Assembly (NCBI RefSeq): GCF_000143415.4 | Contig: NW_003314280.1 | Span: forward strand, 1,426,894 to 1,490,893 | Reading direction: 5' to 3' | Source: Selaginella moellendorffii | Lineage: Eukaryota > Plantae > Lycopodiophyta | Length of the DNA: 64,000 nucleotides | Notes under the pieces: model-generated | Databases searched by the model: none | What the model was told of the DNA's origin: nothing | Seen by the model: the letters and a program-made list of their open reading frames with translations, nothing else | Program-made: the position numbers and the translations under genes | Shown here: positions 52,310-53,875 of the stretch, piece by piece | Layout: each line of letters opens with the position of its first letter | Numbering within the stretch: the stretch's first letter is position 1

Positions 52310-53875
52310 TTAGCCATCGTTCAAGTATATGTCCGCGTACTTGGTGGTAAGATGGCCCAAATACAACCCCGTATCCATAGGCTTGCCAGTGACCAGCTCC
52401 ACCAGCTCCTCCGCAGTCTCATACACACTCCCAACCCTGTGGATCTTATCCCGGAGCCATTCTCTCAGTGGCAACAGCCTTCCCTCTCCAACTTGTTGCC
52501 GGAGCTCGCCACCCATATCCCTGTCCGCAGCATCAAAGATCTGGCACGCATAGATCGCTCCAATCACATAAGTTGGGAAGTAACCAAAAGATCCCATCCC
52601 CCAGTGCACGTCTTGCAAGCACCCCTCGGCATCATCCTTTGGAGCAGCGCCAACGTACTCCTCCATCTTGGCCTTCCAAACTCCCGGGATCTCCTGGACG
52701 CTCAAGCTGCCGTCAAACAGCCCCTTCTCGATCTCGTAGCGCAGCAGGACATGCAACGGATACGAGAGCTCGTCGGCGTCCACTCTGATCTGGAAGCCGG
52801 GCTTCACCACGTTGATCTGGCGGTAGAAATCCTCGTGGCTGATCCTCCCCAGCGAGCTCTCCAGCTCCGGAAAGGCCTCTACGACGCCGCGGCTCCAGTA
52901 GTGGCTCCAGAACTCGCGGCTCAGTCCCACGGATCTCTCCCAGAGCAGCGACTGGGATTCGTGGAGTCCCAAGCTCGGGGGCCCGGAGGCTATGAGCCCG
53001 TTCTCCGAGGCCTCCAAGTCCCGGCCTTGCTCGTACAATCCATGCCCGGCCTCGTGGATCGTCGCTCCAATCCCAAACATCAAGTTGTCCTCGAGGTAGC
53101 GAGTGGTGAGGCGCACATCGGTCGGGCTGGAGATGGGAGTCGTCGAGGGATGGCCGCCAAAGTTGTCCAGCCGGCCGTTCTCGAGCTTAAATCCCATCTC
53201 CCGGACGATCTTCTCGCCGAGCTTCTTCTGCGAATCCAGCGGGAACTTGAGCTCGCTCCAGCCTGGGATTGCCACGCTCTTGTTCTCGGCCACCACCTTT
53301 CGCAGCAGATCGATGAGCGGCTGCTTGATCGACGAGAATATGGCGTCGATCTTCTCGACCGTGGCGCCCCTCTCGAACTTGTCCAGGCAGTAGTCGTAGG
53401 GACGCATCTCGGGAGCCACCGCTGCCGCCTCCTCCTTGAGAGCCTCCAGCCATTCCTCGAGCGCCGGTACCATGATCTGGAAGTCGCTCGTCTCGCGAGC
53501 CTTGCTCCACGCATCGTAGCCGGAGGATCGCAGAGCCGCCAATCTCACCTCTAGCTCCTTCGGCATTCTCGTCGCGCGCGTGTAGTCCCTCCTCGCCTCC
53601 CTCACAGTCGCGGCCTCCATTGGCGACAGCACAGCCCGCAGATCCGGATGCTTGTGGAGCGCATCCAGGCAATCCCCCAGCTCCTTGCTCGTCCTGCGCT
53701 CGTGGGCAACGAGCGCGAGGGTCTCCATCTGCTTCTTCCTGGCGCCATGGCCTCCCGCCGCGAGCATTACCTGCTTGTCCCAGAAGAGGAGATTGCCCAT
53801 TCCTCCCAGCGCCTCGATCTCTCCTAGGCGCTGCTTCAAGCTCTTCATCGCCTGCGTCGTCGCCTCCATAGCCAT
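52310..53875 (-). CDS. Peptidase family M32 (carboxypeptidase Taq-like) metallocarboxypeptidase, intronless
   Basis: 521 aa with DVRLTTRY, HEAGH (HExxH), HESQS, IRVDADELSYPLH...RYEIE, GCLQDVHW and FGYFPTY. Confidence 0.95.
   Translation of the reverse strand: MAMEATTQAMKSLKQRLGEIEALGGMGNLLFWDKQVMLAAGGHGARKKQMETLALVAHERRTSKELGDCLDALHKHPDLRAVLSPMEAATVREARRDYTRATRMPKELEVRLAALRSSGYDAWSKARETSDFQIMVPALEEWLEALKEEAAAVAPEMRPYDYCLDKFERGATVEKIDAIFSSIKQPLIDLLRKVVAENKSVAIPGWSELKFPLDSQKKLGEKIVREMGFKLENGRLDNFGGHPSTTPISSPTDVRLTTRYLEDNLMFGIGATIHEAGHGLYEQGRDLEASENGLIASGPPSLGLHESQSLLWERSVGLSREFWSHYWSRGVVEAFPELESSLGRISHEDFYRQINVVKPGFQIRVDADELSYPLHVLLRYEIEKGLFDGSLSVQEIPGVWKAKMEEYVGAAPKDDAEGCLQDVHWGMGSFGYFPTYVIGAIYACQIFDAADRDMGGELRQQVGEGRLLPLREWLRDKIHRVGSVYETAEELVELVTGKPMDTGLYLGHLTTKYADIYLNDG

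What the first reader, a model, noticed from the sequence alone, without database searches (positions are those of the whole stretch)
52310..53875. Intact, intronless prokaryote-type M32 carboxypeptidase in a land-plant nuclear genome
Seen: a single GC-rich exon with essentially all M32 motifs, embedded among intron-containing plant genes, with no obvious transit peptide. The usual HPF motif reads HPS (GGHPSTT). Known: M32 is typical of bacteria, archaea and trypanosomatids and, to my knowledge, is not part of the angiosperm protease set. Inference: either endosymbiotic/ancient inheritance with later loss, or HGT. The HPS change may alter substrate preference.
Basis: partly seen in the sequence, partly recalled or inferred. 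Interest (0 to 1): 0.7.

Follow-up and report, generated by a model that had tools for sequence, protein, structure and literature searches.

The report
Spikemoss M32 carboxypeptidase, inherited not transferred
This is a real, expressed and already annotated spikemoss (Selaginella) gene for a zinc carboxypeptidase of family M32; mosses, clubmosses and green algae share it and no fern or seed-plant copy was found, so it is an ordinary case of an old gene kept in early land plants rather than a bacterial import.

Summary
Window 52310-53875 (-) is one uninterrupted 521-aa ORF with a full-length Peptidase_M32 match (Pfam E=2e-146). All catalytic motifs are intact except that HPF reads HPS. There is no presequence.

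The window is Selaginella moellendorffii reference sequence (LOC9651520). Near-identical loci are named 'Carboxypeptidase Taq' in UniProt. RNA contigs from three studies cover the ORF without a splice joint, while the neighbouring RAF1-like gene is spliced in the same runs. DNA contigs and a collinear second scaffold link the gene to its plant neighbours, so it is neither a contaminant nor a chimera.

In trees it falls in a 100/100-supported streptophyte clade: a second Selaginella paralog, Diphasiastrum, Sphagnum, Ceratodon and the alga Mesotaenium. The sampled bacteria form a separate clade. A single green-lineage origin is not rejected (AU p=0.59). Two database searches found no fern, seed-plant, liverwort or hornwort ortholog, and a published degradome comparison says Arabidopsis lacks M32.

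So ancient vertical inheritance with later loss is supported, and HGT into Selaginella is rejected.

Small additions: six of seven land-plant genes examined are intronless (Chlamydomonas 16 exons, Coccomyxa 12); loss of the motif's Phe is shared by all sampled land plants; the Selaginella copy lacks the transit-peptide-like extension seen in relatives. Interest is low.

The parts
52310..53875 (-). Complete single-exon CDS (521 aa plus stop) of an M32 (carboxypeptidase Taq family) zinc metallocarboxypeptidase; S. moellendorffii LOC9651520.
   Evidence: ORF. Pfam PF02074 E=2.1e-146, full length. PDB M32 hits end to end. Residues 10-521 are identical to P0256 from the reference scaffold. RNA contigs are collinear with no joint.
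53144..53152 (-). HPS, the variant of the conserved M32 'HPF' motif (residues 242-244).
   Evidence: Translation. Census: HPF 111, HPM 12, HPS 2, HPA 1 of 126; every non-Phe state is a land-plant sequence.
53042..53056 (-). HEAGH zinc-binding and catalytic HEXXH motif (residues 274-278).
   Evidence: The motif is defined in PMC7918520.
52949..52963 (-). HESQS motif (residues 305-309); its Glu is the third zinc ligand in M32 enzymes (family knowledge).
   Evidence: HESQS is found in 126 of 126 aligned homologs.
53876..53922 (-). Minimal 5' UTR: RNA contigs extend 21-47 nt upstream of the ATG, into the 50-bp gap that separates it from the divergent RAF1-like ATG at 53926.
   Evidence: X2 record 8 (to 53896) and X7 record 21 (to 53922). 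Sequence and in-frame stops.
51964..52309 (-). 3' UTR as far as RNA contigs reach (about 250-350 nt past the stop).
   Evidence: X1 record 1 starts at 51964 and X2 record 7 at 52064, both collinear. There is no joint at 52214/52340, which is where the 688-aa RefSeq model splices.
53926..54948 (+). Context, not part of the enzyme: the divergently transcribed RAF1-like gene. It has three introns and shows that the locus is ordinary plant nuclear DNA.
   Evidence: GT..AG joints 54333>54466, 54583>54633 and 54734>54782 appear in the RNA-like runs X1, X2 and X7 but not in the DNA run X6. Raf1_HTH and Raf1_N Pfam hits lie on the syntenic gene in L001.

Best explanation
This is a bona fide, expressed nuclear gene of Selaginella moellendorffii. 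It encodes a cytosolic zinc metallocarboxypeptidase of MEROPS family M32 (carboxypeptidase Taq type).

Origin. It belongs to a streptophyte M32 lineage that was present at least in the common ancestor of zygnematophyte algae and land plants, and probably in the green-lineage ancestor. It has been inherited vertically since. It is retained in some mosses (Sphagnum, Ceratodon) and in lycophytes (Selaginella, Diphasiastrum), and on present sampling was lost in ferns and seed plants.

Changes on the way to Selaginella. By the land-plant stage the coding sequence was probably a single exon, most likely through wholesale intron loss, since two chlorophyte classes share intron positions. The Phe of the HPF motif had been replaced. 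The protein carried an N-terminal organelle-targeting extension with an internal Met. In the Selaginella lineage the gene duplicated. The copy in this window lost the extension and is now present at three roughly 97.5%-identical loci or haplotypes.

Mechanism (inferred from the family, not tested). The HEXXH histidines and the HESQ glutamate bind Zn2+, the HEXXH glutamate activates water, and the enzyme removes C-terminal residues one at a time from short peptides. In the cytosol this would serve peptide turnover downstream of endopeptidases.
For: Identity and integrity.

Source genome and annotation: 98% identity to XP_002972010.2, and an exact match of residues 10-521 to P0256 on a reference scaffold. 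UniProt names sister loci 'Carboxypeptidase Taq'.

Not a chimera or contaminant:
- About 20 kb is collinear with scaffold GL377583.1 at 94-97.6% identity, including one 3,048-bp alignment across M32 and the RAF1-like gene.
- DNA-run contig 53640-54445 bridges the two genes.
- GC3 of 0.80 lies within the local range of 0.64-0.79.

Expressed and unspliced: contigs of X1, X2 and X7 (three studies) cover 51964-53922 with 2-5 mismatches per kb-scale contig and no joints. The same runs splice the neighbour.

Constraint: allelic dN/dS is 0.29.

Vertical descent:
- Streptophyte clade 100/100, the two Selaginella paralogs sister at 100/99, mosses 100/100, sampled bacteria a separate clade at 100/100.
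- The AU test does not reject streptophytes plus chlorophytes as one clan (p=0.59, constrained tree 3.2 lnL better), nor land-plant monophyly (p=0.18).

Distribution: the same 11 streptophyte clusters top both searches, followed by a gap to 47% identity or less. Arabidopsis lacks M32 (PMC8643629).

Gene structure: single exon in Ceratodon, Sphagnum, Diphasiastrum, L002, L003 and here. C. incerta has 16 exons and Coccomyxa 12, with three shared intron positions.

Presequences in relatives.
Against: - The backbone joining streptophytes, chlorophytes, fungi/amoebozoa and the nearest bacteria is unresolved. A common green-lineage origin is allowed but not demonstrated.
- In the careful tree Selaginella branches outside Mesotaenium plus the other land plants (92/89). 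I read this as a long-branch effect, but it does not match the species tree.
- 'Lost in euphyllophytes' rests on absence from a word-indexed protein collection limited to 287-912 aa and 8000 scored candidates. No fern or seed-plant genome was searched at the DNA level.
- Physcomitrium, Marchantia and hornworts also failed to appear, so retention is patchy and some absences could be annotation gaps.
- Cytosolic location and carboxypeptidase activity are inferred only. The effect of HPS on catalysis is unknown.
- Paralog 2 has an intron at exactly the position and phase of a Coccomyxa intron. If that intron is ancestral, land-plant genes lost introns several times rather than once.
Confidence: 0.8

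Rival explanations
1. Ancient separate acquisition. The streptophyte M32 gene entered a streptophyte ancestor by horizontal transfer from a bacterium or another eukaryote, independently of the chlorophyte M32. The single-exon structure is then the original bacterial-like state, not intron loss.
For: - The backbone of the trees is unresolved and the streptophyte clade sits on a long stem (0.46).
- Six of seven land-plant genes examined lack introns.
- Identity to the nearest bacteria (about 44%) equals identity to chlorophytes.
Against: - The tree with streptophytes and chlorophytes held together is 3.2 lnL better than the free tree (AU p=0.59).
- The sampled bacteria form their own 100/100 clade and none nests with streptophytes.
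- One intron of Selaginella paralog 2 coincides in position and phase with a Coccomyxa intron.
- The gene structure of the algal members (Mesotaenium, Logan589) is unknown.
Confidence: 0.15
2. Recent horizontal transfer from a bacterium into Selaginella, one of the first reader's two alternatives.
For: An intronless, GC-rich ORF from a family best known in prokaryotes.
Against: - The closest relatives are a second Selaginella paralog, Diphasiastrum, mosses and Mesotaenium at 47-54% identity, and together they form a 100/100 clade.
- The best bacterial hits are only about 44% identical.
- GC3 lies within the range of neighbouring plant genes.
- The gene is expressed, under constraint and present at three loci.
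Confidence: 0.02
3. Bacterial contamination or assembly chimera.
For: None beyond the 'prokaryotic look' of the ORF.
Against: - The same gene order is found on an independent scaffold, with a continuous 3-kb alignment across M32 and the spliced RAF1-like gene.
- A contig from a DNA run bridges the junction at 53640-54445.
- Twenty runs from nine studies hold the stretch.
- The start codons of the two genes are only 50 bp apart.
Confidence: 0.01

Closest known systems
Bacterial and archaeal M32 carboxypeptidases with solved structures: ChtCP (7A03), Thermus thermophilus TthCP (3HOA/5WVU), Bacillus subtilis BsuCP (3HQ2), Pyrococcus furiosus PfuCP (1K9X)
   Same: - End-to-end alignment, E=7e-106 to 3e-69.
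- HEXXH, HESQ, DXRXT, IRXXAD and GXXQDXHW motifs are all present (motif list in PMC7918520).
- Similar length, about 500 aa.
   Different: - Nuclear eukaryotic gene with UTRs.
- The HPF motif reads HPS.
- There is no reason to expect thermostability.
- Only about 40-45% identity.
Chlorophyte M32 genes, e.g. Chlamydomonas reinhardtii CHLRE_17g734900v5 (family noted as present in Chlamydomonas and absent in Arabidopsis, PMC8643629)
   Same: - Green-lineage nuclear M32, 42-46% identical.
- A common origin is not rejected.
   Different: - Chlorophyte genes are intron-rich: 16 exons in C. incerta and 12 in Coccomyxa.
- They keep HPF.
- They form a separate 100/100 clade.
Land-plant M32 orthologs: Ceratodon purpureus KC19_8G156200 (UniProt 'Carboxypeptidase M32'), two Sphagnum paralogs, Diphasiastrum complanatum O6H91_05G024300, and Selaginella paralog SELMODRAFT_118113
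   Same: - Same 100/100 clade.
- Single-exon CDS, except paralog 2.
- The Phe of HPF is replaced.
   Different: - The moss and Diphasiastrum proteins carry 70-130-aa Ser/Arg-rich N-terminal extensions that this copy lacks.
- This copy has HPS rather than HPM or HPA.
- Paralog 2 has two small introns.
Trypanosomatid M32 enzymes (TcMCP-1, 3DWC; TbMCP-1)
   Same: - Eukaryotic cytosolic M32 carboxypeptidases; 3dwc_A matches at E=7e-77.
- They are the usual textbook example of a 'eukaryote with M32' (PMC6675120).
   Different: - More distant than the plant, algal or best bacterial homologs.
- They were not among the top 120 hits in either search.

Membership tests
MEROPS M32 / Pfam PF02074 (carboxypeptidase Taq family) | Full-length match to the family profile above the curated threshold | tested here: met
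   488.8 bits against a cutoff of 25.1, E=2.1e-146, profile positions 2-489 of 489.
MEROPS M32 / Pfam PF02074 | HEXXH zinc-binding and catalytic motif, plus the downstream Glu ligand in HESQ | tested here: met
   HEAGH at residues 274-278 and HESQS at 305-309.
MEROPS M32 / Pfam PF02074 | Accessory conserved motifs DXRXT, IRXXAD and GXXQDXHW | tested here: met
   DVRLT, IRVDAD and GCLQDVHW are present. Motif list from PMC7918520.
MEROPS M32 / Pfam PF02074 | HPF motif | tested here: not met
   The motif reads HPS: His and Pro are kept and Phe is replaced. All 15 land-plant sequences sampled also lack the Phe, so this is a lineage variant. Given every other criterion, it is not grounds for exclusion.
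MEROPS M32 / Pfam PF02074 | Homology to experimentally solved M32 structures over the whole chain | tested here: met
   Eight distinct PDB sequences, all M32, align over residues of about 5-518. No 3D model was built.
MEROPS M32 / Pfam PF02074 | Metal-dependent carboxypeptidase activity on peptides | not testable with these tools
   Needs a recombinant enzyme assay.
Streptophyte (land-plant type) M32 clade | Groups with moss, lycophyte and zygnematophyte sequences to the exclusion of chlorophytes and bacteria | tested here: met
   UFBoot/SH-aLRT 100/100; SH-aLRT 100 in the 70-row tree.
Recently transferred bacterial gene (HGT) | Nearest relatives bacterial, recipient-lineage restricted, composition foreign | tested here: not met
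   The nearest relatives are plants. Orthologs occur in mosses, lycophytes and an alga. GC3 is within the local range.

The most novel reading that the evidence does not exclude
Land-plant M32 enzymes are a functionally shifted subfamily. At or near the origin of embryophytes the gene lost all introns (possibly by retroposition), replaced the otherwise invariant Phe of the active-site-proximal HPF motif, and carried a dual-targeting presequence for organellar peptide degradation. Its disappearance in ferns and seed plants would then mark a rewiring of that pathway. The Selaginella copy here would be a cytosol-only duplicate with a new substrate preference (HPS). An unfollowed first-reader note of this scan proposes that another M32 copy in this genome lies next to a BURP gene and processes its peptides; that was not checked here.
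Probability: 0.15. Interest if true: 0.4.

Novelty: already known. Interest (0 to 1): 0.18.

Why it matters
It matters little beyond housekeeping.

What it corrects. Protease papers state that eukaryotic M32 is limited to 'some green algae and trypanosomatids' (PMC6675120). The family is also present and expressed in mosses and lycophytes, and homologs occur in some fungi, amoebozoans and ochromonads.

What it offers plant biology. It is one more gene kept by early-diverging land plants that no fern or seed-plant protein set showed. It gives a small, clean example of a 12-16-exon algal gene set against a single-exon land-plant gene. The lineage-specific change in a conserved M32 motif could be tested for an effect on specificity.

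It does not open a long-standing question.

Tried and rejected
Rejected readings:
- Contamination or assembly chimera: rejected by synteny with a second scaffold, a bridging DNA contig and the spliced neighbour.
- Recent HGT: rejected by the phylogeny and by composition.
- Cyanobacterial or plastid origin: no named cyanobacterial sequence appears in the 120 listed hits of either search, though most hits are unnamed. Not pursued with a dedicated sample.
- RefSeq's 688-aa spliced model for this locus: mapped. The RNA contigs do not support it and its extra exons have no recognisable domain in the ORF list.

Searches that gave nothing:
- NCBIfam scan: no hit, uninformative.
- Literature searches for M32 with Selaginella, Physcomitrella or 'Peptidase_M32 plant': nothing.
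- The single 'M32' in the Prasinoderma genome paper is a strain name in its reference list.
- No paper explaining the role of the Phe in HPF was found.
- The look-up of encoding contigs could not place P0003, P0004 or P0017. I used P0166, P0259 and P0013 instead.

Incomplete or failed steps:
- The first MAFFT run timed out and was repeated with faster settings.
- The AU test of lycophyte monophyly did not finish and was dropped.

Not run:
- The 1.84-billion-representative search, structure prediction, fold search and atlas search. The family assignment was already unambiguous, and those libraries carry no taxon names that could settle the absence claim.

- Read laying was given 3,501 letters.
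- In one search the four RAF1-like exons were joined inside a local script, only to compute GC3 and a translation. The joined sequence was not sent to any search tool.
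Full report
**1. The observation**

The window holds one uninterrupted ORF at 52310..53875 on the minus strand, 521 aa. It matches Pfam PF02074 (Peptidase_M32) at E=2.1e-146 over residues 13-513, which is profile positions 2-489 of 489. It aligns end to end with eight solved M32 carboxypeptidases, the best being 7a03_A at E=7e-106.

The family's published motifs are HEXXH, HPF, DXRXT, HESQ, IRXXAD and GXXQDXHW (PMC7918520). All are present except that HPF reads HPS. Only 12 residues precede the domain, and in-frame stop codons lie directly upstream of the ATG. 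This exon therefore cannot encode a presequence. ORF GC is 0.605 and GC3 is 0.80, against 0.49 for the window. Neighbouring long ORFs have GC3 of 0.64-0.79, so the gene is at the top of the local range but not foreign to it.

**2. Which genome, and is the gene really part of it?**

The best database hit is 98% identical: XP_002972010.2, 'uncharacterized protein LOC9640653 [Selaginella moellendorffii]'. Residues 10-521 of the window's protein are identical to P0256, a protein on a 2.30-Mb reference scaffold that also carries LOC9651520. So the window is S. moellendorffii reference sequence.

Two further loci, about 97.5% identical, lie on other scaffolds: LOC9640653 and LOC9646030. They are UniProt D8RLJ1 and D8RFG3, both named 'Carboxypeptidase Taq'. 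The assembly contains both haplotypes, so three copies imply at least one recent duplication in addition to an allelic pair.

The evidence that the gene belongs to this genome is as follows.
- The locus around LOC9640653 (L001) is collinear with the window over about 20 kb at 94-97.6% identity. One unbroken 3,048-bp alignment spans the M32 ORF and its RAF1-like neighbour.
- The same neighbours occur in both: Kelch, RAF1-like, a WD40 gene and a BSD2/DUF2389 gene.
- Twenty public runs from nine studies hold the stretch.
- In a DNA run, a contig (53640-54445) bridges the M32 5' end and RAF1-like exon 1.

Contamination and chimerism are excluded.

**3. Expression and exon structure**

Three transcriptome-sized runs (X1, X2, X7, from three studies) show GT..AG joints at 54333>54466, 54583>54633 and 54734>54782 in the RAF1-like gene. 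The DNA run X6 lacks these joints, so the three runs are RNA. The same runs cover 51964-53922 with contigs collinear to the genome, 2-5 mismatches per contig and no joint.

The M32 gene is therefore transcribed, unspliced across its CDS, and derived from this locus or a nearly identical allele. Contig ends suggest a 5' UTR of at least 21-47 nt and a 3' UTR of about 250-350 nt. Contigs cannot show the strand. However, depth drops sharply in the 50-bp gap between the two divergent start codons in X2 and X7, which fits two separate transcription units.

RefSeq's 688-aa model for this locus splices 52340>52214 and adds domain-less exons. The contigs run straight through that interval, so the 521-aa product is the supported one. 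Between this allele and LOC9640653 there are 13 synonymous and 13 non-synonymous differences, giving dN/dS of 0.29. That is consistent with purifying selection on a small sample.

**4. Relatives and phylogeny**

After the Selaginella copies, the closest proteins (47-54% identity) are:
- a second Selaginella paralog (SELMODRAFT_118113);
- the clubmoss Diphasiastrum complanatum;
- two Sphagnum paralogs;
- Ceratodon purpureus (UniProt 'Carboxypeptidase M32');
- three unnamed moss-like or lycophyte-like sequences;
- the zygnematophyte alga Mesotaenium endlicherianum, with one unnamed sister sequence.

Below them come many chlorophytes (42-46%), a few fungi (Basidiobolus, Calcarisporiella), amoebozoans (Planoprotostelium, Phalansterium), ochromonads, and Nitrospinae- or Nitrosomonas-like bacteria at about 44%.

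A 70-sequence tree and a 41-sequence careful tree both recover a streptophyte clade with full support (100/100). Within it the two Selaginella paralogs are sisters (100/99) and the mosses are monophyletic (100/100). The sampled bacteria form their own 100/100 clade, as do the chlorophytes.

The backbone between these groups is unresolved. Holding streptophytes and chlorophytes together gives a tree 3.2 log-likelihood units better than the free search (AU p=0.59). Land-plant monophyly is not rejected either (p=0.18), although the long Selaginella branch falls just outside Mesotaenium in the free tree.

The gene was therefore already present in the common ancestor of zygnematophytes and land plants. 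A single green-lineage origin is compatible with the data but not proven.

**5. Distribution**

I repeated the homolog search with the shorter-branched Diphasiastrum protein. It returned the same 11 streptophyte-type clusters (49-62% identity), then a sharp drop to 47% or less. No fern, gymnosperm, angiosperm, liverwort, hornwort or Physcomitrium protein appeared, although the collection includes NCBI nr and UniRef.

A published comparison of degradomes states that Arabidopsis lacks family M32 while Chlamydomonas has it (PMC8643629). The trypanosome literature describes eukaryotic M32 as limited to 'some green algae and trypanosomatids' (PMC6675120).

The caveat is that the absence was tested on predicted proteins, not on genomes.

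**6. Gene structure in relatives**

The coding sequence is a single exon in six of the seven land-plant genes examined:

| Gene | Evidence |
|---|---|
| Ceratodon (L005) | 1,773 bp for 590 aa |
| Sphagnum troendelagicum (L008) | 1,683 bp for 560 aa |
| Diphasiastrum (L009) | 1,797 bp for 598 aa |
| L002 (unnamed plant contig) | one ORF among fragmented neighbours |
| L003 (unnamed plant contig) | one ORF among fragmented neighbours |
| This window | collinear RNA contigs |

Selaginella paralog 2 has two short introns of about 61 and 54-63 bp.

The chlorophyte orthologs are intron-rich. Chlamydomonas incerta has 16 exons and Coccomyxa viridis has 12, with three intron positions shared between the two classes (window residues 8, 121 and 183). 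So introns are old in chlorophytes. The simplest reading is wholesale intron loss, for example by retroposition, before or at the base of land plants, with two later gains in paralog 2.

One of paralog 2's introns sits in phase 0 exactly between Q and D of the GxxQ|DxHW motif, the same place as a Coccomyxa intron. The site is a CAG|G proto-splice site, and the chance of one such coincidence is roughly 0.09. I treat it as unresolved.

'Intronless' is thus a trait of the land-plant lineage, not a sign of recent bacterial origin.

**7. Sequence peculiarities**

Across 126 aligned homologs, HPF occurs in 111. The 15 exceptions are all land-plant sequences: HPM in mosses, Selaginella paralog 2 and L002; HPA in Diphasiastrum; HPS in this copy. 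Mesotaenium and its sister keep HPF. The change is therefore shared by all sampled land plants, and Ser is specific to this Selaginella paralog. His and Pro are retained. I found no paper assigning a role to the Phe, so any effect on specificity is conjecture.

Several relatives carry 70-130-residue Ser/Arg-rich, acid-poor N-terminal extensions that look like organelle transit peptides: Ceratodon, Sphagnum tenellum, Diphasiastrum isoform P0259, P0008 and the alga-like P0011. Shorter annotated isoforms start at an internal Met. Both Selaginella paralogs lack the extension. No targeting predictor was available, so 'cytosolic' here and 'organellar' there are inferences.

**8. What it is and how it works**

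The best-supported reading is an ordinary, functional cytosolic M32 zinc carboxypeptidase. The HEXXH histidines and the HESQ glutamate hold the metal, the HEXXH glutamate activates water, and single residues are released from the C-termini of short peptides. This is family knowledge, and activity was not tested. The biological role would be peptide turnover. Nothing in the neighbourhood suggests a specialised pathway, and the RAF1-like neighbour is not conserved next to M32 in Ceratodon, Sphagnum or Diphasiastrum.

**9. Verdict**

HGT into this plant is rejected, and a plastid-endosymbiont origin has no support.
- The gene is already annotated as 'Carboxypeptidase Taq' in UniProt. Published work already records the family in green algae and its absence from Arabidopsis.
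- Interest is low.
- The scan had noted this same stretch before (s1-363868). It also holds an unfollowed note on another M32 copy next to a BURP gene (s1-346992), which I did not test.

Noticed in passing
window 53875-53926: The M32 ATG (minus strand, 53875) and the RAF1-like ATG (plus strand, 53926) are head to head, with only 50 bp between them. RNA contigs of M32 reach 53896-53922. In run X1 one 1,607-nt contig merges the M32 5' part with the spliced RAF1-like mRNA. The two 5' UTRs therefore abut or overlap in a very compact bidirectional promoter.
   Followed up: partly
window 52074-52340 and 51123-51877: RefSeq model XP_002972546.2 (688 aa) for this locus splices out the last 9 codons and the stop of the M32 ORF, then adds four downstream exons with no recognisable domain. 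The RNA contigs laid here run collinearly through 52214-52340. The model looks like a prediction artefact or a rare isoform.
   Followed up: partly
L004:3001-4618 (S. moellendorffii GL377622.1, paralog 2): The second Selaginella M32 paralog has two short introns. One is a phase-0 intron between Q and D of the GxxQDxHW motif, at exactly the position and phase of an intron in Coccomyxa viridis (L007 3933-4129). This is either an ancestral intron or a parallel gain at a CAG|G proto-splice site. The older gene model (EFJ15720) uses a donor 9 nt downstream and so inserts 'ASL' into the motif. RefSeq fuses this gene with downstream PPR-like exons (724 aa).
   Followed up: partly
window 41139-41796 vs 47276-47925; 43836-44445 vs 49108-49744: Two blocks about 6 kb apart are direct repeats at 92% and 82% identity, which suggests a diverged local segmental duplication in the WD40 / BSD2-DUF2389 region. 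A further 350-bp element (46045-46398) recurs inverted at 51661-52036, just downstream of the M32 gene.
   Followed up: no
window 60001-63000: GC falls to 0.27-0.33 over about 3 kb, against about 0.49 for the window. This region also aligns poorly with the other scaffold (81-89% in short pieces). It may be a transposon or another fast-evolving insertion.
   Followed up: no
window 53853-53980 and 54078: Contigs in both RNA and DNA runs carry an alternative form in which 126 bp around the intergenic gap are replaced by 31 other letters (short anchors, 20 nt). There is also a 6-bp insertion (CCATCC) after 54078 in the RAF1-like exon 1. These are probably allelic or paralogous variants from the three near-identical loci.
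   Followed up: no
P0073, P0087, P0026, P0060 in the trees: Ochromonad (stramenopile) M32 sequences nest inside the chlorophyte clade, next to Scenedesmaceae. This hints at an alga-to-stramenopile gene transfer or a green-algal contaminant in those transcriptomes.
   Followed up: no
residue 367 of the M32 protein (window about 52775-52777): In the IRxxAD motif the window allele has the canonical IRVDAD. The LOC9640653 copy has IRVDTD, a substitution inside a conserved motif between near-identical loci.
   Followed up: no
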